A stretch of DNA of 64,000 bases from Trichoplax adhaerens (taxonomy: Eukaryota > Animalia > Placozoa). This document shows positions 5,417 through 53,580 of this stretch, piece by piece; the first letter of the stretch is position 1, and each line of letters starts with the position of its first letter. The stretch spans positions 250,775 to 314,774 of the forward strand of contig NW_002060951.1 in the NCBI RefSeq assembly GCF_000150275.1. Direction: 5' to 3'. The translations under genes were made by a program, and so were the position numbers. Under the pieces are notes generated by a model that saw only the letters and a list, made by a program, of their open reading frames with translations, was not told the DNA's origin and did no database searches.

Positions 5417-5519
5417 AACTGCTGCCCGTTGTCTTGGAGTAGTTGTTTGGTACCCATGTAAAAAGGTTAGTCTACTCAGTATAGTCGTTCCAATGTTTTG
5501 CGCATACTCACGCTTTACG

Positions 5520-6050
5520 CCATACAGTACAGCACCACGATGTTGAACAATAGTGTACTGTACAATACAATAGAGGGTCTCTAGTGTACTGTACACTGTA
5601 CAGTACAGTACTGTACACTGTACAGTATACAGTACTGTACTGTATACTGTACTGTATGAACAATGTACTGTACAAAATACAGACAGTACTACTGTATACT
5701 GTACCACTGAGGCCGAGAAGGGCCAACCGCTTTCTTATACTATTCCACGAGCACGTTTTATCGCCAGCATTTTTCGCGAGTACATGAAATTGACTTGATC
5801 TCGCGTTCTGATACCTCGAACATAGCGTGTATCGGTACAAGTAAGAATAAGTCTCTATTTCTCGTACATCAATTTTCTCGTCAGGCAAGTTAGGACGAAA
5901 TGCTTAGTACTACAGTATACTGTACTGTACTGTACTGTAGTAGGGACGCCCACAGTACAGTACAGTACTAAACTGTACTGTACAGTGTACAGTACTGTAC
6001 ACTGTACAGATAAACTAATTTCACCCCGAAAAATGTACTGTACTGTAGCT
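5520..6050. promoter_or_regulatory. GTACT/GTACA array cluster upstream of POLR2E (putative promoter)
   Basis: Dense TACTGTAC/GTACAGTA arrays at 5520-5704 and 5905-6050, starting ~100 bp upstream of the POLR2E ATG. Confidence 0.65.
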
Positions 6051-6077
6051 AAAAGACCGGCATTTGACGGTACAATA

Positions 6078-6321
6078 ATCGTCTCTATACTAAAGTACTG
6101 TCATAATGAGGTGTTTGGCATAATATTTTGGACGAGATGAGGGCAAAGTGATCAGTCCAGGTCCAGGTCTTCTCCTACACTTTGTAGCCAGTGTACAGTA
6201 TAGTACACTACAAGTATAAGAGAAGACCTGGACCTGCCTGGACTGATCACTTTTGTCCTCATCTCGTCCAAAATATTGTGCCAAACACCTTGTTATGACA
6301 GTACTTTAGTATGGAGACGAT
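6078..6321 (+). repeat. Long near-perfect inverted repeat (hairpin), arms ~96/101 nt
   Basis: 6078-6173 is the reverse complement of 6221-6321 with 5 substitutions and 2 small indels. The 47-nt spacer is itself partly self-complementary. Confidence 0.95.
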
Positions 6322-8894
6322 CGATTTTACATGGACTGATTTTTTCCATATTAAGTTAAGCGATATGACATTGAATCTTATTATCTGTTACTAACTTCTG
6401 CTTGGAAATAGTTATATAAGATCGTAGATGTTATTCAATTAGTACCAGGGATTTCGAAATCAGACAAGCAAGCTCCATACTAAGGAAGCATTTTTCGATA
6501 TTGATGGCCCTCATTGGGTAAGAAAAGTCCGTCTGTCTGGTGTACAGTACAGTGTACACTAAGTTCACACTGTAAAGTTTACACTATGTACTGTACTAGA
6601 CTTGATTACCATTGGGCAAGTTTTAACATGAAACCGGGAAAATTCAATTTTAAATTCACACCGTTGAGCGAACTAGACGGTAGTTGTTGATTGTAATCAA
6701 CATCGACTGCACATTAGCATTCATTCTAAAGTTGTTTTCTCCTTGTACAACTTATCATTAACTCTTTGCTTGTTAGCAACCATATTACTATAATATCCAC
6801 AACGAAATTCCAGTATATATTTATTGTAGTATAGTTACTATTGATTGATCAGTTCATGACTTATTCCAATCGATAAATGTGAAATTGGCTTGGCTCAACC
6901 ATTTATCCAGCTAAGGTAATACCGCCTGAATGTTTCTAGAAATTGTTATTCGATTGCATATGATACCCTCTATAAACTACAAGCTCAATTTGCGCTAACA
7001 TATAGTTTACCATCGTTAAAGTCAATACTTTATTGCTATCAAAAAATAGCAATCTATCCCGTCTACAGTGGATAATAAAAGTAATAAATAGAAATATTAC
7101 AGTTATAGAAGTTGATCTTGTGCTAGTCATTTATTAATGCATTTATCGTTATTGAGTGAATCACCATTAATTCAGCTCATTACTAGCTTTGTTTTATCTA
7201 TTACCCTATGACTATGAGGATGCCATCATCGTACTCCTTACTATTTAAACTCATTCATCAACAAACATCCAATGCCTCTCGATTGAATGCGTACTGTACT
7301 GTATACGTATGTGTAAAATGTTATCAACTATGATTACAAATGAGCGTTATGCTTGCTGTCGTTCTTGCCATGACATTAAGTAATACAGCCAATCATAATT
7401 GTATGTCATCATCTTACACAAAATGAATCTTGGACTTACCTATTTTGATAAGATTAAATTAAAATTCGTTTAAATGACATCAACTCGATAGGCCTACATT
7501 TTCCAGAATAGTCCTGAAGATTACTTTGAAAGACTTTAAATTTAACTATGGTGGAAACAATATCTTACAGCAATTGAAAATATTAAACATTGCCTAAACG
7601 CCAGAATATCTGGATCTTTTTCGCGATAAGGATAACAAAATATTTAGGTACGTACTACCCAGAGTCTAATATGGTTATGACGTATACATACATACTTACG
7701 GTATATGCACATACTTCTCTCTCCAGTAACGTAACTAAAATTTGCAATTCTTTCATCCTTTACCGAACAGTAGAGTACACTAGTATTATACTATACTTTA
7801 TATAGTAGAGTACTCAATCTTGATTCCATTACAGTATTTGTAAAATAAAGGATGAAAGCTTCCGAAACGTTGCATCCGATCCACATATAGTTTAGTATGA
7901 CAAATCATTGATGTGCTATATTATTTTCTAACGTACCGCTAGACAAACGGTAGGCGTTCATCTATTGATGTTATGTTAAATATGATCGTTTATTTACCAA
8001 TTCAAATCTCTAGACGGCGCAAGCTATACTAACTAACGCATGGAGAGGTACTGTAGATTCTCTTTCACGTACAGTAGAGCAATAAGTCGTTCAATGGTAA
8101 TAAATGTTCAGAAGTAGCAACAGACTAAAAATCCAAATATACTGCACTATACAGTATCTACTCCTGAGACGCACATAATTATTGTATTCTACGTTTTAAG
8201 AGTAAGTTCGCACGATAGCATATCGACTTGTTATTTATTTACTATAATAACGCATGTTTGATCGCTTTTAAGTACTGTACTGTACAGTAATGTTGTAAAG
8301 AGATTCCGTCGGATCCTTCTATTCTAATATACTGTACTGTACTCAGTGTACTGTAATATGCCTTGCACAACCTTATATAAACTCCTGCTTGCATATTTTG
8401 TAACTACTTAAACGAATGAACATAATAAAAAAATGTGCTGTAATGACGCAACAAATACCAAAGAAAATACCAGTACTGTAATGTACAGTATCCTAAACGA
8501 CTTTACATTAAATAATATCAACAAAAAATACGCCAAAGCGATATCGTGATATCTAAATTTGATACGCATGCTATACGTACGATAGTGCCATATTTAAGAA
8601 TGTCTACGAGTATAACAAAATATTATGAGAAAAATTTATTTATGGCACTAGCAATATGCCAGATGAATGTAATTCACTTAAATATCTAGAACTTAAGCGA
8701 CAATTCGTTCTTGGGATAGCCCACGAGATGGAATATGCTCTTATATTGCTTACTTTGTTATAAGTAATGTACTGTTCTTAATAGAAGTAGCTTGTTTTAT
8801 TTTATTTTATCATTAGGATTGTGTATTAATAAACGCAATAAAAGAAGGTTCTGCGACGCATAAATGATATATTTCAATCTATGTATGTTTTTAG

Positions 8895-11148
8895 ATGTCT
8901 GGAGTAAAAAGAAGTCAACCTGATGGCGGTCATAATTGTGGTAAAAGTTACAACAGCTTTGGCCAGGTAAATCAGTCTAATCTGATTTTTATGCTTGTGA
9001 ATGATCTCTATACTGTAATTATTGCCATTCTTTTATGGTATAGCGTTTGTTACTCGTCATCAAATTAAATGTAGGATTATTTGTTCATATGCAATATCAT
9101 TGGACGTGATTCGGTGTATTATGTACTTATTTTGTTTAGCTTTTGTAATACGAGAATGCTGTAGCATGATGTTCAACATAAGTTATGCTACAGATATCTA
9201 TGATATGTTAAAGTTAATTTTACTTCTTACGTATTATTTTAATTGGTAATAGTATACATTCACCACGGAGGAACAAGAAGCTGTTCAGACGGCATTAAAG
9301 CAAAAATTAGGCCCAGAATATATTAGTCAAAGGGTCGGCATGGGCGGTAAAAAGGTTAAGCAATAGTTATGCTATTATTTGTATAATATAATTCAACTGC
9401 AAAACTCTAAACCTACTGTACTATTGTAATGTACTCGTATGTACAGAAAATTTCCCTTATAATTATAATATGATTGCTTAGCACTAGTATATAGCATATT
9501 GAAATGGCTAGATTATTCGATTTAAACTTACAGATTATGAATAAATGCCACAGGTATCGTAGGTATTGCAATATATTGATTGCATGAGTATATACCATGA
9601 TACATAGAGTTATATAGCGTAACACCAGATCACAGTAATTCAATTATTTTCGTACAGTATCTTGTATGCGTATACTACGTAAATAAACAAGATAAATTGA
9701 TGGAGAATAAACTCTGTTACAGATAGCCTATATTGAGGGATGGAAAGTATTGTCCATAGCAAATGAAATTTTCGGTTTTAATGGATGGTCTCACTCTGTT
9801 ACCAGTCAAACGATTGGTATACTAACTTTGTGATAGATGATAGTTTTACGGATCTACCTTGCTGGCCATTAAAAACTTAGCATATGCTTGTATCTATGAT
9901 AGATTTCGTCGATCAGATTGGAGCTAAGTTTTATGTCGGTATTTGTGCATTTGTCCGAGTTCAACTAAAGGTAAGTAAATTGTGGAAATCTTTAGGGTAT
10001 TTATTGATAGCTATAGTTCATTGAGAAATTTTATTTAAAAGGATGGAAGTTTCCACGAAGACGTAGGATACGGTGTTGCAGAGGGAATGAAGTCAAAAGC
10101 TTTATCGCTTGAAAAAGCTCGTAAGGAGGCCGTAACAGATGGCCTTAAGAGGGCTTTAAAGTACGTTGTTTGTCACGTAAACTACTTTGAGATAAATGTT
10201 TATAAATCTGATATTTGTGTTATTGGAAATTTTTTGATCTTGTTACAGCTTTAAAGTACTGTACTGAGCCATCGCTGCACTTAGGTTTTAAAATATCGGC
10301 GTATCCCGATGATATTAATCTTTACGTTTTTACATTAAATTTTAAACTTTAGGAGTTATGGACAAGCCCTTGGTAACTGTATCAATGATATTTCATACTT
10401 AAATTATATTTGCAAGCTACGTGACGAAAAGGTTAGTGTAACAGTAGCTTTGATTTGAGTCTGAGATAGTAAATACTACTTAAAAGCAAGTCTGTGCGTG
10501 TTTAATGGCCGATCTTTTAGGCTCAATATTTACAAAAAATGCCTTGTTTTACGTGCATGGTTGCATCAGTTTAAAGAGTTGTATTCTTCCTCTCTATGTC
10601 ATTTCAGTCTCCGCAATCCTTTGATATCAGAGAGATGCGTCGACCATTTAGTACTAACCTAATGAAAAATGGAAAGCGCCCTATAGATCCTAGTAATACG
10701 GTTGGTATGGTTGAATATAATATCAAAAAGCGTAAAGAATCAGATAAGGGACTTTTATCTGGAGCAGGTTATTATTTAATTGAGGTAATGTTGCTGTATT
10801 AAAAGAAAAGTTAACAAAAATTGTGTTATCGTTCTTACGTAGAAAATAAAACATTTACTAAGAGCAGCGTTTCGGCTAAGATGGCTTCATGTTCTTCTGT
10901 TAAAAAATTTGAATTAATTCCCGAAGGTAAACTAGATTGGATTTTGTTTGATACATTCTAAATTAGTTTTTGTTGAAATGCCAGAACAGTAACCTCATTT
11001 AATGCAGTATCTGAGTTAAATTAGACGGACAACTTTCTCTTATTCCTAATTGGACACTTGTATGCATTCAGATGATTTAGATTTGCTCCTTTCTGAGGCA
11101 TTACAAGACGAAAATTCGAGTGAAAATTTAGCTTCTCCGAAACAATAG
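8895..11148 (+). CDS. RAD52: DNA repair protein RAD52 (9 coding exons)
   Basis: Exons ~8895-8966, 9253-9354 ([20 protein letters not shown]), 9723-9816 ([25 protein letters not shown]), 9903-9970 (VRVQLK), 10042-10160 ([26 protein letters not shown]), ~10353-10431 (YGQALGNCI), 10608-10768, 10843-10926, 11072-11148. This is the Rad52 N-terminal domain signature. Confidence 0.95.
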
Positions 11149-13750: not shown

Positions 13751-14089
13751 TACTCTTTTACAAGGAGCTGCTGTAGAGCCAGTGGCTAAAATGGAAAGAA
13801 ATTATTCACGACTTGTCAACTTTGTTGACAGTACTATAGATTATAACTCAAATAATTTCATAGTGTAGTTTATTAAGAATAGGCAAAACTTTTCACTAAT
13901 AATTTTGTTTCACGATTCTGTACATCGGCAACGAGAAACAACTACAAGATATCAAGTCATTTGTTGGCATTTTCATAATATTATATTCCATTGATATCGC
14001 TCGCTATATCGATTAGACTAGCGAATTGCCGTAGAATAGTTGGTTACTGTACAGTATACCGATATGGATTGCATGTCATTCATTGTACA

Positions 14090-14366
14090 TAGCAAGCATA
14101 AGCAAGTTTCAAATAGAAAGTGTCTAGTCTAATGGTATAGCAAGCATAAGCAAGTTTCAAATAGAAAGTGTCTAGTCTAATGGTATAGCAAGTACAAGCG
14201 AGTTTCAAATAGAAAGTGTCTAGTCTAATGGTATAGCAAGCATAAGCAAGTTTCAAATAGAAAGTGTCTAGTCTAATGGTATAGCAAGCATAAGCAAGTT
14301 TCAAATAGAAAGTGTCTAGTCTAATGGTATAGCAAGCATAAGCAAGTTTCAAAGAGAAAGTGTCTA
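14090..14366. repeat. Minisatellite, 48-bp unit x ~5.7
   Basis: Unit tagcaagcataagcaagtttcaaatagaaagtgtctagtctaatggta repeated near-identically. It explains the repetitive ORF 14080..14352. Confidence 0.97.
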
Positions 14367-14637
14367 ATCAATGTATTATACCGAAGAATATGAATGGAAC
14401 ACAATACTATGAAAATATCCCTAAAGAAGCTAATTATCTTTTAGTTCTTTCTCGTTACCAAAATGTCATAAAAAAATGTTCATAACTGGAAAAATTTGAT
14501 CTACCTATTCTTCAATAATGCAATAAAACTAATTCACAATCGATCCTATTATCCCTCAGAATTTCAACGACAAAGTTGACCCATTACGACTAATTTTCTT
14601 TAAAATTTTGGCCATTCTAGGCGTATCAAGGGTATTC

Positions 14638-14872
14638 ATGTACAGTACACTGCACAGTATTGTGCTGTACAGTATAATAGTGTACTGTACAGTACAGTAC
14701 GATAGTGTACAGTACATACTGTACTGTACTGTACCGGTTATCAACATTACTGTACCAGTACTGTACAGTACTGTAGGACTGTAAAGCAGGAGCACAAAGT
14801 ACTGTACACTGTACAGTATGGGTTTTTCACTGTACAGTACTGCAAAGAAGCTACACCGAGTACAGTACCGTA
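14638..14872. promoter_or_regulatory. GTACT/GTACA array cluster upstream of TTC39
   Basis: Dense array ending ~100 bp before the ATG at 14975. Confidence 0.65.
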
Positions 14873-14974
14873 TATAGCCACACCTATGTCGCTCTGCCCT
14901 TCTTGTTAGTAAAGTCAACCATTGGCCGCTAGCGCTTTCTAAAGTGAGAGAGTAAAAATTGATCGATTTTCTTC

Positions 14975-26864: not shown

Positions 26865-27050
26865 CGGCCGCGGAACGGTACGGTACACTATCGGCCGCGG
26901 ACCGGTACGGTTCGTAACAGTGTACAGTACAGTACAGTACCCTGCTCCAGGACTACAGTGTACTCTACAGTCTGTACTGTAGAAAGCATTGGATACACTA
27001 CAGTACTGTACTGTACAGTGTACAGTGTACAGTACACTGACTACGACTGT
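26865..27050. promoter_or_regulatory. GC-rich palindromic motifs plus GTAC array upstream of UBE3C
   Basis: cggccgcgg twice and ggtac repeats, followed by a dense GTACA/GTACT array. It lies ~450 bp upstream of the ATG at 27503, which directly follows an acceptor, so a 5' UTR exon is likely at ~27060-27112. Confidence 0.6.
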
Positions 27051-33500: not shown

Positions 33501-34720
33501 CAACTTTACAGTCGTTAATGAAAATCTTGGCGAAGCGGAGGTATGATAAATAATAATATAATAATGATTTCAAGAAACAATTTATTAAGTAAATTTTATA
33601 TCTTTTGCTTATTACGTTGCTATACAAGAATGGCAGTATGAGAAATGATTACATTACTTTTAAATTATTAATATAGGTCGTTGATTTAAAACCTGGTGGC
33701 CAAAATATTGCCGTTACACCAGAAAATCTAATTGAGTACATTCATAAACTAGCAGATTATAAATTGAATAAGGAGGTAAATACTTGTAAGGTATCATACA
33801 TACATAATACCATATATTCGTTGTATTTAGTCTTTTCTAAACGCTTTATATTGTGTGATTTTTAAGGTGTTGGTGTTGCATAAGAACAGTTTAAATTTAT
33901 TTTATTTAAATGCGATAGATACGTCGACAGTACTTAGCTTTTAGAGAAGGACTTGCTGATGTAATCAATATTGAATGGTTAAGACTCTTCAATCAGCACG
34001 AACTTCAGGCATGATTTTATTCTCTCTTTAAAGCGCGATGTGTAATTAATAAATCTAATGCGATATTATAATACATACAGGTCCTAATATCTGGCGCCGA
34101 AGTGCCGATAGATCTACAAGATTTAAGAGCTAATACAAACTATTCAGGTACCTAGCTAATTGTCTTCTTCGAAATAACTGATGCTTTGCTATTACTTCAC
34201 AATTATACGCTTATATGTAACTTCCTACTATGACTTGATGACTTGAATTGTTAATTATGAAATTATATACTGCAGGTGGCTATAGCGATAATGACGAATA
34301 TATTAATATGTTCTGGGATGTAGCCGAGGATTTTACAGACAAACAACGCAGAAAGTTATTAAAGTTTGTTACTAGCTGTTCAAGGCCTCCACTGCTAGGC
34401 TTTAAGGTACTCTTTATTAATTTAAGCGGCATCGAAAAGAGTCCTCAGTCGTACCATAAATTAAAAAATCATTTTCGTTCTGTTTCCGTTATTCTGATCA
34501 ATCAACGTGTTAATTACTTCTATTTGAAACATGTTTTATTTAGGAGTTGTTTCCGGCATTCTGCATTCACGGATCAGGCGAGAGCAATGATGAAACGCGA
34601 CTACCTTCGGCTAGCACCTGTATGAACTTGTTGAAATTACCAAGATTTCGCAGTCGGGATATTTTAAAAGAAAAGCTGACTTATGCTATAGAATCTAATT
34701 CTGGATTCGAATTAAGTTAA
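27503..34720 (+). CDS. UBE3C: HECT E3 ubiquitin ligase UBE3C
   Basis: N-terminus [21 protein letters not shown] / [12 protein letters not shown] / IQ motif KIQATFRGY. Middle region [30 protein letters not shown] domain [41 protein letters not shown], catalytic [14 protein letters not shown], ending GFELS* at 34720. Confidence 0.95.
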
Positions 34721-38270: not shown

Positions 38271-38329
38271 GATGGAAGTTCTTCAGCCAGGAGCTTCTTG
38301 TCTTTTACCACTACGCGTGCCTTAGACTT

Positions 38330-38750
38330 GGTAGTACTAGTACAGTATGCCGAAATCCAGTACAATACTTGCAGTGTTCAGGTCTGGTTCAGGCCTGGTC
38401 CGGACCAGACCAGAACCAGACCATAAAGATTTGTAGTAGCGTACTGTACAGTATTGTACGTACAGTGTACGGTACAAGGTTTTCTTTTAGTACTGTAGTT
38501 CACCGTACTGTACACTGTACGACATCCATGTACGGACTACAATGTACAGTACAGCGTACTGTACATTGTATTGTACTGTACACTGTACGTTTCCAGTCTT
38601 GAAGTGTACAGACAGTACAGTACAGTACAGTAAAATGACCAGCAAAATTGTCGGCGCTGAAAATTTGTTATTGAAGATGAATGGTGGATGATCTTGCTCG
38701 CACCCTTTCCTTTTCTTTACTTTTAGCTCCATAGATGTACAGTACAGTCT
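38330..38750. promoter_or_regulatory. GTAC array cluster with a 42-bp GC-rich palindrome upstream of WDR83OS
   Basis: Array starts ~60 bp upstream of the ATG. It contains ggtctggttcaggcctggtcc|ggaccagaccagaaccagacc at 38381-38422. Confidence 0.65.
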
Positions 38751-39515
38751 AGTAAAGAAGAAAAATTGCTAATACACTACTGCAAGTAACTGCAACTGCT
38801 TGCAGTACTATCAATGGAGACTCCTGGTTATGGAATACTCTCATAGACATGAACACTTGTACAGTACACTGCATAGAAGATTCAATATATTAACTTAACT
38901 CAAAGTATAGTATACCTGTACTGTTTTTCCTTGCTGAAAGCGACAAAAACAGACAACCCCTGTTGATTACCAAGTACTGTCCTATTTACAGGTATGCTAG
39001 CAAAGAGATGGACGATCACTAAAATTTCACTAGCCGCCTACAGAGATAGAATATTTTCGAGGGAAAATGAACGATATGCCACTATATTTTCGATAATAGT
39101 TAACCGCCAGGGACTTGCAAGAGTAGAATTTCTCTTACAAGTCTGTGGTTGTAAACTGCACGGTGGACGTTTCCAGTCATTCCATTTCAATGAAACATAA
39201 CATAGTCCCTGAAAATACTGTACAGTAGTTTGCCTCTCTATTAATATAATTATTATTATTTTTATTGGCATTCAATAGCCATTGATAGCTATCGCCCTTC
39301 TCTTTCTTGGACAGTTTCGGTAGTCCCTTTGCCGTACTACGACTGCGTTACTTTGCAGTATGGTAATCAGGTAATGTAATGTCCAATGGTCTGTACCAGG
39401 TACGGCACCAATGTCATATTCTATTTTTATTCATTTGTTGACACCGGCAGATGAGTCGTGGACGTCAAGTGTGCTGTGAGTGAGTGTACAGTGTACAGTC
39501 AGTCATCATAGAGAG

Positions 39516-40174
39516 AGATATTCTTCTTCAATAGGGGATTTTGTAGTATCCTTAATGACTTTAATTTACTGGTAAAAGGTATAACTATCTCCATTTTTTC
39601 AATTCAAGTCTTTGAGGATACTGTCGATTTCTCTTGTTCTACTTTATATTGGCTTTAAAATTCACTAGTCCATTTTCAAATGCAAGTCATTTGACTCTCT
39701 ACTGTACTGTACAGTGTACAGTATATGGTAGCATAAGGGTTCGTTGTACTGTATAGTCTACTATTCCGTATCATGGCCATAACGTCATAACCTGCAGTCC
39801 TGTCAATACTGTACAGTGCACAGTGTACAGTACTGCGACGGTCCTCGTACTGTAAAAGATATTCTTCAATAGGGGATTTTGCAGTATCCTTAATTAATGA
39901 CTTTAATTTACTCGTAAAAGGTATAACTATCTCCATTTTTTCTATTCAAGTCATTGAGGATACTGTCGATTTCTCTTGTTCTACTTTATGTTGGCTTTAA
40001 CATTCACTAGTCCATTTTCAAATGCAAGTCATTTGACTCTCTACTGTATATGGTAGCATAAGGGTTCGTTGTATAGTCTACTATTCCGTATTATGGCCAT
40101 AACGTCATAACCTGCAGTCCTGTCAATACCGTACAATGCACAGTGTACAGTACTGCGACGGTCTTCGTACTGTA
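39516..40174. repeat. Tandem duplication of a ~320-340-bp unit
   Basis: Copy 1 is 39516-39854 and copy 2 is 39857-40174 (agatattcttc..aataggggatttt...gtactgcgacggtc(c/t)tcgtactgta). The copies are highly similar, with indels in the GTAC tracts. Confidence 0.95.
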
Positions 40175-42815
40175 CTCGACGATATCACACCTTCTGTACG
40201 CGACTTCTGATAGGAAAACCTAAATGAGGCTCGTCGAACTAGTGTACTGTATAGTAATAAGTTCAAAGTTGCTGGCTATGATATATTTAGTCGTCATTTG
40301 GAACTTTCCTCGCTGACAGATCTTCCATTACAGAAACATTTTCAACACCATAAACCAAAGAAATCGAAAGACTCGTCCACTTTCACTGGCGAAAAACACC
40401 TGTGAAATGATGTACGTTAGCGCATATTTGTATCAGAATAGTGATAAATAACGCTCTTTTATGCCAATACAGCCTGAAAGATCAGCAATGTTTACAGTCC
40501 ATGTCAGACGGATCATGACTACCCTTATTGAAATTGTTTTATCCATCTATTTCAGTCTCAGATTCCTCTTCTTTTTTCCTCATCTAGACAACTACGCTTT
40601 CCTTCATAATAGTCATGTTTAGAGTAGTTAAGTGCATTAATGGACTCTACTCAGTGCTAGAATTAATCGATATACATTCAAAGGTTACAGTCTATCAAGG
40701 CCAGTTGGTAATATAATAAGTAAGTATTCACCTATCAACTACCCCTTTCTTATACCGTACAAAACAAAATGTTCAAATCCCAATATTTTTCTTACAATCC
40801 AAATGTAAGCCTTCAAAATTTCAAATTCTTGACATGCTTTTAAAAGACATGCAAGAATTGTAGAGGAGTGTCGCAACTTGTATTTTAACGGTCTATAGAG
40901 AGTAGACGAAAATTGACTTCAGTCAAGTAAAGTGGAAGAATTGCCAAAATTTGTAGAAGGTATTACAGTACTGTTAGAACTTGACATCATCGTAGACTTG
41001 CGGTACAGTACGTAATAGTAAAACACGATCATCATACTTGGTCTTGAAAATACTCCCAACTATCTACTGTATCTACCTGATTTTAACGACTGAAATTCGA
41101 CTTACCGTATTGGCCTTCGAAGAGCTCTTTACTATCATTTATCATTAGTCATTATTGTCGTAGCGACAAGAAAAAGTCGGAATAGATATACTGTATACGC
41201 GTAGAGCTATTAAAACCATTAATTTATGGAACTAGACACTGTCGACAGCCATGTTGAGTTAAGAAGTCAATCCTCCCTCATACACGCAAAATCTCCATAT
41301 ACATATGCGATTACGCGTACATACGAATATATCGTAAGAAAGTTATACACTGTGCAATGCACATTAGCAGTATCTGAAATGTTTTAATGAAGAAATGACT
41401 AGTTGACTTGAATCACTTCTTGGAATTCACTAAAATTGACTGAAACACTAACGTAGGTTATAATTTGTACGTGATAATTGTGGTAGTGGCAACTTGCAAG
41501 GATGTTCTGTATTTATTGTTGGAGTCTGTACTAACGTAATCCAATGCATCAGTAATGCTACTTTCAAAACTAAATCCAAGAATCATTCTAGTGCTGATAT
41601 AAACTGTTTTTTGATAGCACATTGAAAGTATTCACTAAGTTATTTGGCGATACTGTGATGACCTTTTTTCAATACATCCTATCCAGAATGTTTGTATGCT
41701 GTTGGCACTTTATCGTGTCTTCTATACTTTCGCTTTGAATGGCTCATGGAAAATTAATTAATTATGTGCGGGTATAGCAAAAGCGATTTCTTTTTTTTCT
41801 ATCACCTTGCTTGATAAAACAGCATTGAATTGCAAAGTTGAATTTCTCTACACTGAGTTTGTTAGTAAAAGATACAGTAGTATTCATTTTTGACTGATGG
41901 AATAGATTCCCTATCTACGACTATGCTTGATATTCTATTATGTTGACAATAAATCGATCCTAATGCTGCTATGATAAATTCATATGCGCTTTTATGAATC
42001 CTAGTGGTCTTGATCTCACTTTGTTGTCACTTTCAAGTCTGCAAATAGTTTTTAGCGGCATTGAAAGACTGCAACGCTCGAGATAATTTCGCTACAGTGT
42101 TTAAAATCTTCATGATAAATGCGTACGTATACCTGGCTTTAGCTTGCATTACGTAACAAATTCGGAGAACAAAAACAGCGAGCCAACTCTGTCCTGAAAT
42201 GATGTGGAGATTGCCACTTCATTTACCTGCTCAAGTCGTTACTTGGTAGCTGCATCAAGTAGGCAATAGTGCCCTTGTTATACTTTACGGCTTATGAGCT
42301 GTATTATTTCAAAAACCCTCAATTAATTTCGATATGCTATCCTGCCCATCCTGCACCTTACATACGTACGCTCTTGCATCTCGAGTTGAAATTTTTCTGA
42401 TCCAATATGTATTTGAGCTACGATTCACATAATTGTCCATTTTATTAGTATTACGGTTATGTGAATTGCTGTAGGTTTTGTCAATTTCTATAATTTTTAA
42501 ATTTAATTTTTTATTATCGACGACATTGATTTTAATTATACAGTAATTATCGGTAGCGGAAACTAGCCCTCTATCATTAGGTAATACTGCAAATCTTTAA
42601 TAAATGACAAAATACCATATTCTATAATGTACGTATAGTAGGTATAGAATACGTAATCATCTAATCTATCTTCACAATAAATTCGAATCATCATGATCAA
42701 TACTGAACGATTGAAAACAACCACTGTACCTGCAGCGCTATTTCATTAATTAATTTTAATCTAAAGTATATTTTCTTTTTCGCATGGATTTAAAGCATTT
42801 CAATTAAGTTTCAAA

Positions 42816-45800
42816 ATGACGTATAACTACGATACTGTGGATTTGGATAAGATCCTAAACGATTTAGAAAATGAAGATGATCATCCTCAAGGTAAGCAGC
42901 AATCTATATTGTACTGTTGCTTTACCTAAAGCTATCAAATAATTCTTTATCATGCCGTGCTGTTTTGCTGCTTTCAACTAGAATGATCAAATAATTCGTG
43001 TTGGTCTTATTCTTTACGTATCATTACTTCATATATATCATGAATTTATAGCACCTCATATTTACTGACCGTGGTGTTTATTCCGTCGTATCAGATAAGC
43101 TACCTTACCTTATTATAGGATTTTAAGCTTTTTAATATCTACAATAAGATAGTTTTGATTCATATTACTATTTATCACCTATCGAAATTGTAAATGCAAT
43201 AGATTTTGATTGTTGACATTGACAATTGTCATTTATATACGCGTATATTAATTATGCACGTAGATTACTGTAGATGCATCGAATGCGAATGACTTTTGCA
43301 GCACAGCTTAATGTAGATAATGTCAATATCACATTATATATATACAGTAAGTGCATTATATTTATCGATGTGCAGACCACTCTCTCTCTCTTGAGTCGAA
43401 TATCCTTGTGTCTTCTGTTATTTTAATGTGTTACAAAGCGGCAGCGGATACACTACTGTATTATTGTACTATATGCGTATATAGAGTATCACGGAATGAT
43501 ACTGCTTCAACAGCGTTAACGAGCATTGCCGTACAGTAGTATAAATTTAACACTCATTCAATCTTATTATAACGTCTATAAATGAAGTAAATTATTGTCT
43601 CTTACAACATCTAAATTTGAACGTTAGGACTATCGATGCAGCCGCCATTGTATCATCAAAATAGCACTGTCAATCGTCCCAGTGCTATGACCCCTGACAA
43701 TTACCGCAAATCAAATAATCTCAATAAGAAGCCTATTCCAGAACCAACGACCCATCGACCATTGAATAGAAGTAATGCAGTTAAGCACCCCATACCTTCT
43801 ATTAACAGTAGCTCTCACAATCGTAGCATCATGGAAGAAACCACATCCAGCAGTGTCTATCCATCATTGGCTGCATTTGAGTCATCGAATACTGGAGTAA
43901 TTGAACAAGGCTATCCAAGCAGTGATAGCGCTAACGCTTTGATTAATAGTGATTATAATAAAAATAATAATTTGCAACATAGCAGCAGCTCAGTTAACCG
44001 TAACCTATATGGCTTTCTAGCTGGACACAATTCCATTAATAGCGAAGCCAATGGGTACAGCAGCGATCCCGCTGGCGGAAATGTAATCACAACCACAAAC
44101 AACGTTAGTACTAGCGACGCTGACTATTATCAGAATTTTATTAACCAAAATAGCACCGGTAATGGCCATCCAAACCGTAGTTATAACGATAGCTCAGAGA
44201 AAAGGAGTACTAAAGTCCCCGTGCAACCTTCATCTGATAATGAAAGTGATAATGAGTGGGAAACTATGCTGGATAAATATGCATCACCTATACATGTAAA
44301 TGACAAGACTGGTAATCAAGCGAATTCTGCTACTCCTACATCTACCTCAATTGCTAGCAATACTAATCATGGTAATGCGCAAATGCCTAGTTCTGGCCAA
44401 ATCAATAATTCTACCAATGAACTCAGTACTGCTTTAGATATTGATAATATTTTGCCGAAGTTCGATATTGCAAGCCTTAAATCTGATTTCAATTCAATAC
44501 CATCTTCTGGTAGTTCATTACATCCTACTTCAAGTAATGATATTGCCCCAGAAACAAATAGTACTAAATTAAAAACACCGAGTAACCATTATACAGGAAA
44601 TTTATCGCATCAACCTAAAGTTGATGCGGATTCTAACGAAGCTCCTACAAGTTTTGAGAACTCTCAGTCTACTCAACATGTTTCAATGGTTCCTACTTCT
44701 CATGACAACAGGATTGTATCGCCTGAAGGTGACATTACTCAAGGATTGGTATCTTTTTCGAACAATGATAACATTAATATTAATCATGATTTAGAAAATA
44801 ATGTTGTATGGGATAAATCTGAAAACAATGATGCAGCTCCCTTACATAAAGAGAGAAACGATGAGATATCTACTATAGGAATTGTAAATACCGAGATAAA
44901 CGCTATCAGCAATGTGAATAACCATGAAAATTTCAGTTTAACTGATACAACATCAGTTGATACGTCAAGCATGTTTCAAGATAAACAAAATCTTAGCAAT
45001 TTTTCAACGAATAAAACCAATAATCAAGAATCATCAACATCTACCTCATCTGATAAAAATAGAAATAACAATGAAGTAAGTAGCAGTTACAACAATATTT
45101 CAACCCAGCTGGAAAGTGTGTCCGGATCTTTCAAGAATTCTCACCAAAGTACATCGGATAAACTCTCAACCGACATTTTATCGCCAGTATCAATCATTGA
45201 TAACACAAACAATCATGTTAATGATACTAGTAGTGAATTTACTGTAAAAAATGATGTTACAGCTAAGAATAACGCTTTCAGCAACTTGCCAGACTTAAAC
45301 GGTCGTATCAGTGGAGGAATGAAGTTACCAGAAAAATTCGGTAGCGATCAACCTGTTAAGAATTTCGTAGAATCTGCCAGCAAAAGTGGTGATAATACTA
45401 TTTCTACTGTTCATGAGTCAATCGAAAAGACTAATTATAATGTGTCAGGTGTGATAGATAACGAAAAAGATAGAATTAGTTCAGAGTCTAGCATCGCTCG
45501 CTCTCTCTTGACTGATTTTCAAGATAAGAACTCAAATGACGATAAGGCAGCTAAGATTGATAATGAATTAAACTATGATAACGATACCTTACCACTTGCT
45601 TTGACTAATGGTAATGATTCTGCTACCGAAAAGATATCTACAGAAAGTTTTGAGCTCGATAATTTAATTTTAGATCCTTTGTACGAAGTTAAAAAACGTG
45701 ATACAACGGAGAATTTGGACTCGAATGATCTATCATCTTTGTTAGACATTAACTTCTCTACTGTCACCGTTACTCCGAATTCTGCTAATAGCATAACAAG

Positions 45801-48800
45801 TATCTCTTGTGCTGAAAACGTATCTCCCACCATTAAGACTGGTGATATTGATATTTCAAATAAAGAGACTATAGCGGATTCTATTTTAGAGCGACAAGTT
45901 TTAACCGATCAGGAAAAAGTGAGCGACCACGAGGAGAAATCATTAGAATCTAAATCATGCAACGAATCACTACTTATTGACAGTCATGGTAGTAATCAAG
46001 TTGATGCTAGCCATAACCAAGAAAATTCAAACGTATCTGATTTACATTTGGATAAGGATGATCTTTCTTCTGATATCAAATCTGTAGGCATTAAAATAAA
46101 CCCAGAGTATATTACAACAAATATACCCTACAGCAAGGACGTAATAGAAAATGAAGGGGCTAATAATTTAGATATCACTAGTAGTGAAGAAACTGCAAAT
46201 GAAAAGTCATCAATTATTAATACAGGAAATACACCTGAAGGGAATATTCTGTCTGATAGCAATATGGACTATCTTTCAAGTGATAATATTCCCGTAATCG
46301 ACGATCTCTTATCTGGTGTAATGAACGAATTAAATGGTAATGAAGATTATCATCAAGAAATCAACGATAATATTACTAACAGTGGAGGTAGGTTTGTTAG
46401 CAGAATTGATTTATCAGATACAGTGGCTTAGAAATTGACTTAAAAATCACTAAATGAAAACAATTCATGCTGTTGCAGGTGATGTAGCTGAAACTGATAT
46501 AGAAAATCCATCTTCAAATGCAACTACAGTTTCTGTAAATAATTCGATGGAAGTTAACTCTCATCCCAATAATGTTACAGATAACGGCAACTCCTTACAA
46601 GAATCTGAAGATAACTTTTTACGTTTGACTGACGATGTAGATTTAATTAGCGGCAGCAATGCGCTATCACAATGCATGGATCTTGTTCTTAATATGGATA
46701 ATCTGGAGCAGTTTCCCGAGGAACCAGTTTCGGAAGCAGCAGTAAAAGGTGATGTATTGCCGTCTACAAATACTATGAATGATGTCATGCCACATGATGA
46801 GTACAATGGAATTAAAAATACGCTTGAAACCTTGACAAATGGTAGAGACAACAGCCAAGTTAATGATAGATTATTAACGACGGCTACGGTAGACGCTTTG
46901 ATTCCAAGTAATGCGGAGCGTGCACCTGGCCATCTTACTGATAACAACAATGTACCAAGCTCAAGCGGTACATTTAGCGAAGAAAATTTTATGCAGACTT
47001 CAATCAATCCACAGATTAACGAAATGAGTTTAGTCGACGTTAGTAATGGATTACATTCTGATATTGCAAGTGATCAAGTCTCCAATCAGAACATACCGAC
47101 AGAAAATATAGTTGATGATATTAACAATAATGTTGCCGAAGCTGCAGCTTCTAGCAATCATAATGTTGGCCAGTCTGATGGAGGCACATCCAATTTAGCC
47201 AGTAGCGGGAGGTCAAATAAAGTTGGTAGAAGAAGCGTCAGGTTTGCTCCTACAGCAGAATATATTGGCATAGAAAATGTAACAGATGATGGTTTGCCAA
47301 CATCTCAACCTCAGGTTCTTCGTCGTAATATTCCAATTGACCAGAGCTACCGAGTTGGTTTGGCTAGTCAGAGTCCTCCAGATAATGAAATACCTTCAAC
47401 TGGATCTACACCAACAAATAGAGATGACCTTCCTAGTTATAGCCTTGGAAATCAGGCCGACAATCTAGCTGGCAGTCCTAATAATTTTGTAAGTAATGAT
47501 GCTACAGGCAACATGCCTCAACCTGACGTAAGTACATCCTCTGCTGATTACGTACCCATTACTCCTGCATTTCCTGGACTCGGATTTGAACGACCAACTT
47601 GGGTGTCGGATACGGAGGCCGTTCAGTGTATGCAATGTGGGGTTAAATTCACAGTTTTAAAAAGGCGTCACCATTGCCGCGCATGTGGGCAGGTAAATGG
47701 ACTTTGCATATCGCAATACGTGTGTAGTCTTAAATTATATCCCTCATATAAAAACTTGATATTTTAGGTCTTATGTGCTGCTTGTTGTAGCATGAAATTT
47801 GTGTTGACCTTTCTGAGTAATAAACCCTCTAGAGTTTGCCATATATGTTACCAGTACTTAAATCAACAACAGCAGCATCCCATTCGAGAACCAGCGCCAT
47901 CTTATGAAGAAGCAATGCGAGCTCCTCAGCCTCTAGATTATCAAACCGAAATAGCTGCGGGTTCTGCCATAGCTTCTACCACTGGCATGATCACACCACC
48001 GACGAATTTTCAACCTATATCTGTACAATCTTTAAGTCAACCAAGTACGAATGTTGTTTCTTCTTCTCCAAATACTAATGAAGTGCCTCAGGTTGCTTCC
48101 GGTAGTGAAACTAGCGTAGCTGAGGCCGCCAGTAGTCCAGATAACAGCAGGAGAGAAGGTAAAGACTGTAATGAATTGGTCATCGCCTTTATAGATTATC
48201 TTGAATTTAACGTTATTAATTTTTATTTCTCTAAGGTCAAGCATTATCTAATAATGGAGAGTCTAATGAAAGTGACAATAGGGGTGATACCGACGAAGGA
48301 AGGCAATTAAGTGGTATATTTTATGTTTATGTTGTTAAATTTCTGAAAAGTTAATTGTTACAATGACTGTTGTTAATTATTTATCTACCATGATGTAGAG
48401 ATTGAAGTTTGTACACGAAAACTACTCTCATTTACCATTAGTGAACGTGTTCGCGTAAAGGTCAAACTAGCAAACTGTAAGTAGCATGTATGAATTTCTC
48501 TTTAACTGTGTACCACATCACTGACCTTCCTTCATTCCTACAAATCAAATCTGTTACTTCCATTTAGATGCTGAAAGATTTTGTTGGTGCTTCTGTACGA
48601 GTGGATTATCGAACTATGGCCAGCAGGAATTGGTTATTGCTCAGTTAAATTTTGTTTGTAGTAGCATTTTCAAAATTAACTTAACCTTTTCCAATACTAA
48701 TTCTTGTTCGGTTAGGTAATTGTTTTGGAACGATTAAGTACTGACGATGTTGTTCCTCGTGGCATGTTAAAATTTTTTAAAGTGATATATAGACAGGCCA

Positions 48801-50883: not shown

Positions 50884-52532
50884 TGATGTGTAAGAAATTT
50901 TGTATATGCATATGACCTTACTTGGTGGATTCATTATAAGCTATTACGATTTGTTAACCTCGTTATGATTTTAATGATATGGATATACCCATAATAGCAT
51001 ATATGATTAATATTGCTGATTATCACATCACTACAGTGTTTCTTCAAGTTGTTGCCTAGCACAACATTGACTTCGGCCGTCATGATAACCAAGTGCAATA
51101 TTTACCGTGTCTAAGAAATATCCTAGCGAAATATTTAGAAGAGATCTTCAGCAGGAATGTTATAATTTATTTGATATGTTTGATCCATGCACGGTTGTGC
51201 TTAAGATATTATATACGGCATACATATAAAATCACTAACTGATACTAAGCAACATTATTATATTATATGGAAATTAACCGTTGATTAATTATAATCTGAA
51301 ATTATATCACTACTTTTATAATGTGTATACAGCATCGTAGATTACTTCAATATTATTCGGTAACTACTGATTGATTGTAGCTATTAAGAAATTATTTCGA
51401 TTATGCATATTATCACAAATGAATTTTTGGGATTATGGATGTCTGTATTATATAACACTATTTAAAATTTGGGTTAAATTTTTCAACTTATTGTTAATGT
51501 GTAGCAAATTATATCTTAAAATGCTGTTCTATTTATATTTTAATTAAGCTACGCTCACTTTTCGTTAGAATAAGTTGATATTGCATCTCGCCATGGATGG
51601 AGTGATCGAAAATAATTATTTACCATTAATAATACGAAAATGATCAGGATCAATAAACATTATTATACCATAGGTTTTTGAGGAATAGCTTGTGGATTGA
51701 ACTGATAGATTGAAAATATTACTAATGTATGATACGTACTAAGCTATGATGTACGGCAGATCTTAATTACAGAATACACCGTCGGTATTGGAGTAGAAGA
51801 AATGAATACGAATTCTTGGTCATACTGTAGATTTATTAATAGTTTCATAGACATTACCTTGTATTATGTGTAGCACCAGAATTCCGCTTATTTGATATTA
51901 TACAATTATTATTGAATTTGTAATGCTGATATCGATGGCTGATTGATTTTCTAGATACCTTACCTTTGGAAAATTTGGCTGATGACTTGAATACTCGATA
52001 GCTTATCTATTTACTAATATACTGTACGTGAGTGTACTGTATGTATGTCATACATATGAGTAAGTAGGTAGACAAGGAGAGCTAGGCGTAAGAGGAAATT
52101 ATTTGTGATTACAAAACGGATATTTGGGGATTCGTTGTTCGATTCTAATACGTTAAGTTTGGTATATTTCGCGTATTACCCGAGTATAAGTGTTGCTATC
52201 GAATGGTCTGACTGATGTACAGTACGTTATACTGTACTGTAGTAGGCACGAATGCTATAGGTAAAAGACATCAGTAAAGAACGAACTTCAAAGCAAAGCC
52301 AGTTTATTAGTTATCGATATAACTTGCATCAAGTTGATAACAATGTTCATGGAAATTAGAGCGAAAATATATTACAGAAACGGTTATTCAGGTCAGAACC
52401 ATACTTAAAATAAAAGTTTTCCATAAAAGATCCTTTAAAAGTGAGTAGGCCATGGATATGCAATTCTAGGATCATGTATTACGTAATGTTGCTGGATGGT
52501 AAGACCAATAGTAATAGGCTATAACAATTTTT

Positions 52533-53211
52533 TTAATTTTTCAATCCTGCAAGTTTCTTCAATCTCTCGTTTTCTTTAACTCTACCCATAAAACTGTCAT
52601 GATAGAATAATATTGCATATCAGAGAATTGTATTGAACACGAGTTTTATCTATCTTTTAATTATCTCTTTACATCCATAGTACGTATATAATAGCAACAG
52701 TAATCAGTCTTTCAAGATACTAGTTGACTGATGGCAACAATATCAATTTCAATCAACATTAACGACTGAACAGATTGCACTAATGCGTGAGTCGGTCACC
52801 ATCATATCGATCTTGTATCGGATAAGTTAAGCAAAAGTCTTGTCGGTTGAAAAGCTAATTTTCATTTTATGTCATCCGACATATTGTATTGAAAAGTACT
52901 TACTCTTCATATTCGCATTCATGCCAAGCATGTCGTTCATGTTGACATCTCCAAGGTAGGTAATAGTTTTCTTTCCTGCATTTCATCAGAGGGATATAAA
53001 CATGAGCGCAAAAGTCACGACGGTGCAATGGAACTTTTGCATCTTCCATTTCCTGGGCCGTAACTTGCATTTCTATCAATAAGAAATAATTTATCATAGA
53101 GTTCAGTATTGGTTGATAAACTGCCCGACTTCAACTATCATGACAGGCGTGGAATAATGCTTAAAATATCATCGTACTTTTATTAGGATAGCAGGGTTTA
53201 TTGTCAGCCAT
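52533..53211 (-). CDS. NDUFB7: Complex I subunit B18 (twin CX9C), 87 aa, 3 exons
   Basis: Exons 53211-53178, 53072-52904 (EMQVTAQEMEDAKVPLHRRDFCAHVYIPLMKCRKENYYLPWRCQHERHAWHECEYE), 52593-52533 (FMGRVKENERLKKLAGLKN*). Total 264 nt, in frame. Confidence 0.94.
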
Positions 53212-53284
53212 TTTTTCTCTCTCTCTCTCCAGTAGTGTCGTAGTCTGAAAAAGGGTACAACAGACTGTTACCGACGCGAGTGTT

Positions 53285-53580
53285 GGCTACAGTGTACAGT
53301 ACAGTACAGTGAATCACGTTTTGCTGTACTGTACAGTACTGTAGTTCTTCCAGACCGGACGGACTGAAGTACTGTACCGTTCAGCGGTACAGGGGTATAG
53401 ACAATCCACCAATCACGATCATCACTTCATAATTACAGTACAGCGTACTGTAATCTACAGTATCAGATACTGTGGTTAACTTACAATGTACTGTACTGTG
53501 CAAAGTGTATAGTACAGTATAGTACAGTAATCCTTATAGTGTACAGTACAGTACAGTACAGTAATCCTTATAGTGTACAG
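53285..53580. promoter_or_regulatory. GTAC array cluster upstream of NDUFB7 (possibly shared with MSH1)
   Basis: Dense array from ~75 bp upstream of the NDUFB7 ATG, including a 25-bp direct repeat gtacagtaatccttatagtgtacag (53522 and 53556). Confidence 0.65.

What the first reader, a model, noticed from the sequence alone, without database searches (positions are those of the whole stretch)
5520..53580. 'GTAC islands': a 5-nt-period palindromic array marks gene starts across the window
Seen: dense runs of GTACT/GTACA units (TACTGTAC, GTACAGTA, palindromes CAGTACTG and CTGTACAG) at 5520-6050, 14638-14872, 26915-27050, 38330-38750 and 53285-53580. Each lies within ~300 bp upstream of the first exon of POLR2E, TTC39, UBE3C (inferred UTR exon), WDR83OS or NDUFB7, on either strand. 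Weaker clusters occur at 8270-8490 (RAD52), 39480-40250 (ZFYVE side) and 54960-55220 (MSH1), while coding exons are nearly devoid of them. Inference: this is a lineage-specific, orientation-independent promoter signature that acts like a CpG-island analogue. It could be a binding platform for a dimeric factor, a nucleosome-excluding/cruciform/Z-prone tract (TGTACA alternates purine and pyrimidine), or the product of a mutational process targeted to open chromatin. I do not recall it being described as a system.
Basis: partly seen in the sequence, partly recalled or inferred. Interest (0 to 1): 0.85.

Follow-up and report, generated by a model that had tools for sequence, protein, structure and literature searches.

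The report
Known ACAGT promoter repeats of Trichoplax
The 'GTAC islands' are real and lie just upstream of many gene starts, but they are the ACAGT pentamer repeat of Trichoplax, published in 2010 as abundant and gene-upstream; how it works is still unknown.

Summary
GTAC follows GTAC at exactly 5 bp 74 times in the window, against 4.4 expected. Islands make up 2.3% of 213 kb but hold 28% of all GTAC. The genome (105.6 Mb, Trichoplax adhaerens-like) has 6758 exact four-GTAC runs and none in a reversed control.

This is already published. Wang et al. 2010 (PMC2871265) named (ACAGT)n the major Trichoplax microsatellite, with 54% of copies within 1 kb upstream of genes. A 2026 neural-network study of Micro-C data (PMC12817080) recovered a repeating ACAGT motif. 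This scan flagged the same arrays in at least eight other windows of this genome, and one earlier follow-up reached the same verdict.

New here:
- The unit is best written ACWGT. Polarity switches at about 0.3-0.4 of junctions, against 0.03 in ACAGT microsatellites of other organisms.
- The centre base is A/T 28:1 over G/C.
- Islands evolve about 11 times faster by indels than neighbouring intergenic DNA between T. adhaerens and Trichoplax sp. H2.
- Islands still sit at the orthologous NDUFB7 and ELAV promoters of placozoans with about 76% protein identity.
- Islands share no flanking sequence, so they are not a transposon family.
- An 80-kb stretch holding two DMRT genes has none.

The mechanism is untested. 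The most likely one (about 0.4) is a multivalent platform for an unknown factor.

The parts
5527..5704 (.). Island 1, left ACWGT block, upstream of POLR2E (minus strand, ATG 5416-5414)
   Evidence: 17 GTAC, 7 at spacing 5. The Rpb5_N exon is at 4127-4264 minus. A splice joint links 4237 to 5360. RNA-run contigs end at 5433 and 5439, about 90 bp from the block edge.
5705..5905 (.). Non-repeat core between the two blocks of island 1; contains CpGs and one TCGCGA (5774)
   Evidence: Sequence read; rendering; TCGCGA hit.
5906..6098 (.). Island 1, right ACWGT block, on the RAD52 side
   Evidence: Unspliced RNA-run contigs appear from 6216 onward.
6542..6596 (.). Small cluster about 40-200 bp upstream of the 5' ends of the main RAD52 contigs (6637-6803)
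   Evidence: 5 GTAC, 2 at spacing 5. Contig pieces start at 6637, 6754 and 6803.
6637..8964 (+). RAD52 5' part: non-coding exons 6637/6803-6913 and 7490-7642, then exon 8890-8964 with the ATG at about 8895
   Evidence: GT..AG joints occur in all four runs. A Rad52_Rad22 domain lies at 10039-10251.
8272..8351 (.). Weak cluster inside the RAD52 5' UTR intron (7643-8889), not at the mapped RAD52 start
14640..14868 (.). Island upstream of a candidate first exon (ATG 14975, GT donor 15007) of the plus-strand TTC39-like gene
   Evidence: 23 GTAC, 12 at spacing 5. Sequence. Iml2-TPR_39 exons run from window 19250 on the plus strand. The first exon is inferred, not shown by RNA.
26878..27035 (.). Island upstream of the plus-strand HECT E3 gene; two GC-rich 18-mers lie at about 26867-26911
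   Evidence: HECT domain at 34242-34622 plus. The 18-mer occurs only here in the genome. The gene start was not determined.
38330..38628 (.). Island upstream of WDR83OS/ASTER (minus strand, ATG 38270-38268); includes a GC-rich palindromic stretch at 38376-38425
   Evidence: ASTER exons at window 38097-38225 and 36691-36792 minus. Sequence. 22 GTAC in 38441-38628.
39483..40247 (.). Scattered weak clusters upstream of the FYVE/SARA-like gene
   Evidence: FYVE and SARA_C hits. The gene start was not determined.
53255..53578 (.). Island upstream of NDUFB7 (minus strand, ATG 53211-53209)
   Evidence: 21 GTAC, 9 at spacing 5. Sequence. NDUF_B7 exon at 52903-53130. An orthologous island is seen in L001.
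54966..55228 (.). Weak cluster upstream of the MutS-family (MSH1-like) gene, ATG 55271
   Evidence: Sequence. MutS_I, III and V hits.

Best explanation
Identity (about 0.95): these are the promoter-proximal (ACAGT)n arrays of Trichoplax adhaerens described in 2010.

Anatomy (shown here): each island is a patchwork of short blocks (median 60 bp, range 19-188 bp). The blocks are built from the odd-palindromic pentamer ACWGT, so GTAC is the junction of two units. A 7-bp variant step (GTAC-ACT/AGT-GTAC) also occurs. Islands start about 40-170 bp upstream of the start codon of a subset of genes and are often shared by head-to-head pairs.

Dynamics (shown here): the arrays are made and constantly reshaped by unit-sized slippage. 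Even so, they persist at the same promoters across placozoan lineages.

Mechanism (inferred, about 0.4): what is kept is a high local density of ACWGT/GTAC words. These would act as a multivalent, orientation-free platform for an unidentified, probably dimeric, sequence-specific factor. That factor would keep the promoters of broadly expressed genes open and insulated, much as GAGA-element arrays do with GAGA factor in Drosophila.
For: Identity: the unit, period and genome match and the literature describes them.

Promoter position:
- POLR2E: block edge 111 bp from the ATG; RNA contigs end 17-23 nt upstream of the ATG.
- WDR83OS 60-171 bp; NDUFB7 44 bp; ELAV 96 bp.
- H2 annotated locus: RanBP1 175 bp, ELAV 102 bp, CAAP1 32 bp, M48 576 bp.
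- Permutation test.

Word-level constraint:
- The centre letter is W in 6758 runs and S in 239 in the same context.
- Yet clean centre changes to G are seen between H1 and H2.
- Polarity switches at 0.28-0.38 of junctions, against 0.03 in 120 metagenome contigs with ACAGT microsatellites.

Turnover with retention:
- Indel events are 29.8/kb in islands and 2.6/kb in other intergenic DNA between H1 and H2. The only two unalignable segments lie wholly inside islands.
- Islands are present at the orthologous NDUFB7 and ELAV promoters of lineages with about 76% protein identity, with no alignable array sequence.

Independent functional hint: a neural network trained on T. adhaerens Micro-C recovered a repeating ACAGT motif and confirmed by in-silico mutagenesis that its found motifs affect the predicted maps (PMC12817080).
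Against: No binding factor is known, and none was looked for beyond a blank and uninformative SBP-domain search. No accessibility, nucleosome or true 5'-end data could be laid on the arrays, because only assembled contigs were served. Retention at orthologous promoters is also what a promoter-targeted mutational process would give. The cross-species sample is two genes. My gene-start sample is small, and one start (TTC39) was found by looking next to the island. Some weak clusters lie in an intron or between convergent 3' ends.
Confidence: 0.4

Rival explanations
1. Neutral by-product. A mutational process tied to promoter activity (slippage and fold-back template switching at the self-complementary GTAC in open or single-stranded DNA) keeps generating ACWGT arrays. 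The arrays themselves do nothing.
For: Islands are the fastest-evolving DNA in the H1/H2 comparison. Indels are mostly 5, 7, 15 or 21 bp, and two segments are unalignable. No array sequence is conserved between lineages. Blocks are short and out of phase with each other.
Against: The centre letter is W 28:1 over S, although transitions to S do arise. ACAGT microsatellites in other organisms stay single-polarity, so the chemistry of the repeat alone does not give the pattern. Dense arrays are absent from the long ORFs sampled and from an 80-kb stretch with no island. The neural-network result suggests an effect on contact maps.
Confidence: 0.25
2. Intrinsic DNA structure. The arrays act without a dedicated factor, by disfavouring or positioning nucleosomes or by extruding hairpins or cruciforms under transcriptional supercoiling.
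For: Single strands of six blocks fold far better than dinucleotide shuffles, with z from -2.7 to -5.9. In one nucleosome-positioning construct, replacing CTCTAGAG by CTGTACAG or CAGTACTG lowered nucleosome stability and positioning (PMC2880596, Table 1).
Against: The GTAC autocorrelation peaks at 5, 10, 15 and 7, 12, 17 fade to background by about 25-30 bp. There is therefore no long-range helical phasing. Alternating purine-pyrimidine runs are only 4-6 bp, and GC is 0.41, so Z-DNA is unlikely. The nucleosome data come from one construct in another context.
Confidence: 0.2
3. Transcribed element. The arrays are rows of weak initiator-like sites (ACAGT resembles the fly Inr TCAGT) or function in 5' UTR or promoter-upstream RNA.
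For: Tens of contigs per RNA-type run share array words and then run on into unlike sequence. The one run on record as RNA (X13) does this too. Wang et al. found ACAGT to be the commonest pentamer repeat in ESTs. The units contain no ATG.
Against: POLR2E contigs from two studies end at 5433 and 5439, about 90 bp short of the array. An out-of-frame upstream ATG at 5457 lies between them. Mixed-polarity arrays in a 5' UTR would form strong hairpins. Contigs cannot show starts, and DNA carry-over is not excluded.
Confidence: 0.1
4. Transposon-derived. The islands are copies or remnants of a dispersed element, for example the Mutator family whose terminal repeats Kim et al. 2025 found in promoters at loop anchors.
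For: Kim et al. report Mutator insertions at about one third of promoters. GC-rich motifs (CCGGAC, GGTCTGG, CGGTAC) sit next to several arrays. A minor ACGGT-type array class exists, with 210 copies genome-wide.
Against: After masking array words, 16 islands with 500-bp flanks share no sequence except where their flanks physically overlap. PMC12817080 treats ACAGT as a motif separate from the transposon-borne ACGG motif. H1/H2 differences are unit-sized slippage, not insertions.
Confidence: 0.05

Closest known systems
(ACAGT)n microsatellite of Trichoplax adhaerens (Wang, Zhang, Meyer, Bao 2010, Biol Direct 5:18, PMC2871265)
   Same: Same organism, same unit and same upstream-of-gene location. 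That paper reports 78% of pentanucleotide repeats as ACAGT, with 54% within 1 kb and 85% within 5 kb upstream of genes, and proposes a transcription-factor site.
   Different: The paper treats it as a plain microsatellite. It reports no mixed polarity, no W-only centre, no 7-bp step, no cross-species retention and no H1/H2 hypervariability.
Repeating ACAGT motif found by the Chimaera network on T. adhaerens Micro-C (PMC12817080, 2026)
   Same: Same motif, recovered from chromatin-contact data. That study's model predicts insulation at gene starts in this species.
   Different: It is an in-silico attribution with no locus-level anatomy. The text does not say which contact pattern the ACAGT motif goes with.
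GAGA-element arrays bound by GAGA factor or CLAMP at Drosophila promoters (from general knowledge, not tested here)
   Same: Short tandem words, orientation-free, promoter-proximal, rapidly turning over, and acting through motif density.
   Different: The sequence is different. No binding protein is known in placozoans, and no accessibility data were examined here.
Mutator-TIR loop-anchor motif of placozoan promoter hubs (Kim et al. 2025, PMC12221973)
   Same: Also enriched at promoters of broadly expressed placozoan genes and conserved across four placozoan species.
   Different: It is described as transposon-borne, and PMC12817080 gives it as an ACGG-type repeat. The ACWGT islands here share no flanks.
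Vertebrate CpG islands
   Same: A compositional mark of many housekeeping promoters that does not depend on orientation.
   Different: The ACWGT islands have GC 0.41 and CpG observed/expected 0.67, below the genome average. They are repeats, not a compositional domain.
Heat-shock elements (arrays of inverted 5-bp nGAAn units bound by trimeric HSF; general knowledge)
   Same: A 5-bp modular unit used in both orientations within one array.
   Different: Heat-shock elements need strict alternation and are 3-6 units long. Here the orientation is irregular (switch about 0.3-0.4) and islands span 150-700 bp.

Membership tests
Trichoplax (ACAGT)n promoter-associated repeat (Wang et al. 2010) | Tandem ACAGT/ACTGT units at 5-bp period | tested here: met
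   74 spacings of exactly 5 against 4.4 expected. TRF finds period-5 arrays. The spacer letter is A or T in 186 of 195 units.
Trichoplax (ACAGT)n promoter-associated repeat (Wang et al. 2010) | Genome is Trichoplax adhaerens | tested here: met
   The assembly has 105,631,681 bases in 1414 contigs. It is 98.1-99.4% identical over 22 kb to Trichoplax sp. H2 GCA_003344405.1. That the assembly size matches Triad1 is from my own knowledge.
Trichoplax (ACAGT)n promoter-associated repeat (Wang et al. 2010) | Lies within about 1 kb upstream of a gene | tested here: met
   POLR2E, WDR83OS, NDUFB7, ELAV, RanBP1, CAAP1 and M48. Permutation test.
Ordinary single-polarity microsatellite | Uninterrupted head-to-tail copies of one unit on one strand | tested here: not met
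   The switch fraction is 0.28 (T. adhaerens) and 0.30 (H2), against 0.03 in 120 metagenome contigs. Only 38% of four-GTAC runs genome-wide are pure. Runs are mostly 1-2 units long.
Dispersed transposon or MITE family | Copies share non-repeat flanking sequence or terminal repeats | tested here: not met
   All-against-all blastn of 16 masked islands with 500-bp flanks gives hits only between physically overlapping flanks.
CpG island | High GC and CpG observed/expected above the genome average | tested here: not met
   GC 0.409 and CpG o/e 0.67, against 0.326 and 0.95 for the 213 kb.
Factor-bound promoter repeat platform (GAGA-element type) | A sequence-specific protein binds the repeat and the region is nucleosome-depleted | not testable with these tools
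   No ATAC, MNase, ChIP or proteomic data could be examined. Only assembled contigs were served by read laying.
Mutator-TIR loop-anchor motif (Kim et al. 2025) | Matches the published motif and lies in a Mutator terminal repeat | tested here: inconclusive
   The motif is given only in figures. PMC12817080 calls it an ACGG repeat distinct from ACAGT. CGGTAC/CCGGAC-type words do sit beside several arrays.
SBP-box (GTAC-core) binding sites | Genome encodes an SBP domain | tested here: inconclusive
   PF03110 found nothing in the genome, but it also rang in no control genome, so the blank is uninformative.

The most novel reading that the evidence does not exclude
ACWGT arrays are the binding platform of an undiscovered placozoan-specific architectural or pioneer-like factor. 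This factor would define and insulate the promoters of broadly expressed genes in an animal without CpG islands. Selection would act on word density while slippage continually rewrites the sequence.
Probability: 0.35. Interest if true: 0.7.

Novelty: already known. Interest (0 to 1): 0.3.

Why it matters
Placozoans are a key lineage for how animal gene regulation began, and their promoters lack the usual compositional marks. A repeat at thousands of promoters, hypervariable in sequence but fixed in place, would be a simple and tractable promoter-architecture system if it has a function. The phenomenon has been in print since 2010, so the value lies in the mechanism, which is still untested. 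The grammar and turnover data here give concrete designs for that test: ACWGT against ACSGT oligos, and natural H1/H2 length variants.

Tried and rejected
- Homology search with the 936-aa FYVE-gene ORF found nothing, so it could not lead to orthologous loci.
- Look-ups of the window's own proteins are withheld.
- Genome sampling stopped at 200 kb, of which about 50 kb read N. I could therefore not repeat a genome-wide test against gene starts and rely on Wang et al. for that.
- Read laying served only assembled contigs, so true 5' ends, strand and depth are not known. The apparent array-to-array joints (for example 5616>8330) are repeat artefacts, not splicing.
- The loose end at 8527 matches nothing in the window.
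- The SBP-domain search was blank but uninformative.
- The GC-rich 18-mer beside the 26.9-kb island is unique to that spot, not a genome-wide motif.
- I saw no consistent arrangement of unit polarity relative to gene direction by eye.
- L003, an unknown eukaryote with NDUFB7 next to ASTER, has no arrays.
- Spliced gene models were searched exon by exon only.
- No structure or complex prediction was warranted.

Full report
WHAT IS THERE

The window is G000:C1406:250775-314774 of a 105.6-Mb assembly in 1414 contigs. A 22-kb stretch next to it is 98.1-99.4% identical to Trichoplax sp. H2, so the genome is Trichoplax adhaerens.

- GTAC occurs 410 times against 199 expected from base composition.
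- Consecutive GTACs lie exactly 5 bp apart 74 times, against 4.4 +/- 2.1 in third-order Markov simulations.
- Tandem Repeats Finder reports periods 5, 7, 10, 12 and 17 at every listed place.
- I joined the window to the next 150 kb of readable sequence. In that stretch, 16 islands cover 2.3% of the DNA and hold 28% of all GTAC. That is 67/kb, against 3.2/kb in long ORFs and 4.2/kb elsewhere.
- Genome-wide there are 6758 exact four-GTAC runs and none of the reversed control pattern.

IT IS ALREADY DESCRIBED

Wang et al. 2010 (PMC2871265) reported that pentanucleotides are the commonest microsatellites in Trichoplax. They found that 78% of these are ACAGT, with 54% within 1 kb and 85% within 5 kb upstream of a gene. 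Genes near the repeat were enriched for ribosomal-protein and kinase functions, and the authors proposed a transcription-factor site.

In 2026 a neural network trained on T. adhaerens Micro-C maps recovered 'repeating motifs ACGG and ACAGT'. The authors confirmed by in-silico mutagenesis that the motifs they found change the predicted maps (PMC12817080). That paper identifies its ACGG motif, borne by a transposable element, with what Kim et al. 2025 (PMC12221973) described: an enriched motif at loop anchors of placozoan promoter hubs, carried in Mutator terminal repeats.

This scan has flagged the same arrays in at least eight other windows of this genome. One earlier follow-up (s1-730695) reached the same conclusion.

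WHERE THE ISLANDS SIT

Contigs of four RNA-type runs from three studies were laid on 3801-9800.
- They show a minus-strand splice from 4237 to 5360. The exon at 4149-4237 matches Rpb5_N, and the start codon is at 5416 (MEDEEE).
- The POLR2E contigs of two runs end at 5433 and 5439. The transcript therefore probably begins about 90 bp short of the array edge at 5527. An out-of-frame ATG at 5457 lies in between.
- On the other side, RAD52 has two non-coding 5' exons (6637/6803-6913 and 7490-7642) and its ATG at about 8895.
The mapped RAD52 5' ends lie beside island 1 and the small cluster 6542-6596.

Other starts:
- WDR83OS: ATG at 38270 on the minus strand, 60 bp from the first array words and 171 bp from the dense block.
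- NDUFB7: ATG at 53211 on the minus strand, 44 bp from the island.
- MSH1-like: ATG at 55271, 43 bp from a weak cluster.
- TTC39-like: candidate ATG exon at 14975, 107 bp from its island. This one is inferred.
- The start of the HECT gene was not determined.

Four of six main blocks lie within 200 bp upstream of one of these starts. The permutation mean is 0.11, and none of 200,000 permutations did as well. The TTC39 start was found by looking near the island, so this is not fully independent.

The annotated H2 locus L144 gives an independent check. Strong clusters lie 175 bp upstream of RanBP1, 102 bp upstream of ELAV, 32 bp upstream of CAAP1 and 576 bp upstream of a peptidase M48 gene. Only weak clusters fall in an intron or between convergent gene ends.

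Not every gene has an island. An 80-kb stretch holding two DMRT genes, FAF1, an EF-hand gene and a phosphorylase gene has none. This fits the published bias towards broadly expressed genes.

GRAMMAR

The unit is best written ACWGT. It is a pentamer that is palindromic apart from its centre, and GTAC is the junction of two units.
- In units flanked by intact GTAC the centre is T 96, A 90, C 4, G 5. Genome-wide the same context gives W 6758 and S 239.
- Adjacent units switch between ACAGT and ACTGT at 0.28 of junctions here and 0.30 in H2.
- Genome-wide only 2599 of 6758 runs are pure, which implies about 0.38 per junction. The two polarities are equally common.
Mixed polarity is thus a placozoan feature and not a property of the repeat.
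- A second step of 7 bp (GTAC-ACT/AGT-GTAC) is common.
- Blocks are short, with a median of 60 bp. The GTAC autocorrelation falls to background by 25-30 bp, so there is no long-range helical phasing.
- Because of the mixed polarity, single strands fold much better than shuffles, with z from -2.7 to -5.9.
- I saw no arrangement of polarity relative to gene direction.

EVOLUTION

Between T. adhaerens and H2, substitutions run at 36/kb in islands against 6.8/kb in other intergenic DNA. Indel events run at 29.8/kb against 2.6/kb. The indels of 4 bp or more inside islands are mostly 5, 7, 15 or 21 bp. The only two unalignable segments (127 and 464 bp in H2) lie wholly inside islands. Part of the substitution excess is misalignment.

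Despite this, two metagenome or read-assembly lineages with about 76% protein identity and the same exon structure carry ACWGT clusters in the same place. These clusters lie upstream of NDUFB7 (L001/L002) and ELAV (L146), with no alignable array sequence. That these lineages are placozoans is my inference.

Islands share no flanking sequence with each other, so a transposon family is unlikely.

HOW IT MOST LIKELY WORKS

Shown: promoter-proximal position, word-level regularity with a W-only centre, rapid unit-sized turnover, retention of place across lineages, and no shared flanks.

Inferred: what is maintained is a density of ACWGT/GTAC words. I rate a multivalent platform for an unknown, probably dimeric, factor that keeps these promoters open or insulated at about 0.4. 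Its closest working analogue is the GAGA-element arrays of Drosophila, an analogy from general knowledge that was not tested here.

Rivals:
- A promoter-targeted mutational by-product: 0.25.
- An intrinsic structural effect on nucleosomes or cruciform formation: 0.2. One nucleosome construct lost stability when CTGTACAG or CAGTACTG replaced CTCTAGAG (PMC2880596).
- A transcribed or initiator-like role: 0.1.
- Transposon origin: 0.05.

None can be settled without accessibility, 5'-end or binding data, which the tools did not provide.

LIMITS

Only contigs, not reads, were available for RNA. Genome sampling was capped at 200 kb. 

VERDICT

The promoter-signature reading is essentially the 2010 proposal and is partly supported. 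The claim of novelty is not. The new details add to the description but do not change the class: already known, with the mechanism open.

Noticed in passing
window 38376-38425; 53345-53362; 6155-6169; L135:4419-4780: GC-rich words of the CCGGAC / GGTCTGG / GGTCCAG type sit beside or inside several islands. CCGGAC occurs 6 times in island neighbourhoods against 0.21 expected. Seven of the 13 CCGGAC/GTCCGG hits in 213 kb lie within 9 bp of an island. The stretch at 38376-38425 is a near-palindrome. This may be related to the loop-anchor motif of Kim et al. 2025, which I could not read from the text.
   Followed up: partly
window 26867-26911: Two direct copies of a GC-rich 18-mer (GCCGCGGA[A/C]CGGTACGGT) lie at the edge of the island upstream of the HECT gene. 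The pattern occurs nowhere else in the genome.
   Followed up: yes
G000, genome-wide: A minor S-centred array class, (ACGGT)n/(ACCGT)n, exists. There are 210 three-GTAC runs against 2 in the reversed control, mostly of one polarity.
   Followed up: partly
window 6637-8964: RAD52 has two non-coding 5' exons, and its ATG lies in the third exon about 2.1-2.3 kb downstream of the mapped 5' ends. Low-depth unspliced contigs extend back to 6216.
   Followed up: partly
window 5455-5457 (minus strand): An out-of-frame ATG lies 41 nt upstream of the POLR2E start codon, between the array and the ends of the RNA contigs. It would overlap the main ORF if transcribed.
   Followed up: no
window 14089-14373 and 4321-4577: A 48-bp tandem repeat (6 copies, 96% matches) lies just upstream of the 14.6-kb island. 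A 132-bp tandem duplication lies in the POLR2E intron.
   Followed up: no
L126:1289 to L134:1595 (about 80 kb): This long island-free stretch holds two DM-domain (DMRT) genes (L130:3423-3854, L133:866-1423), a DMA motif exon, FAF1, an EF-hand gene and a PNP_UDP_1 gene. A weak, unphased GTAC cluster lies about 400 bp upstream of one DM exon.
   Followed up: partly
L144:5999-8964: In Trichoplax sp. H2 an MT-A70-family methyltransferase gene is the head-to-head neighbour of the ELAV-like gene and shares its island-bearing intergenic region. No link to the GTAC words was tested.
   Followed up: no
L065:1250-1480: A metagenome contig of unknown origin (GC 0.45) carries mixed-polarity ACWGT arrays arranged in a higher-order repeat a few tens of bp long. 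It is one of the few non-single-polarity cases among the 120 hits.
   Followed up: partly
L003:9573-10261: In an unidentified eukaryote contig, NDUFB7 and an ASTER/WDR83OS gene are head-to-head neighbours and there are no ACWGT arrays. In the window the two genes are 15 kb apart.
   Followed up: no
window 43621-46428: The 936-aa open frame of the FYVE/SARA-like gene found no homologue at E <= 1e-10 in the word-indexed protein search and has no Pfam domain.
   Followed up: no
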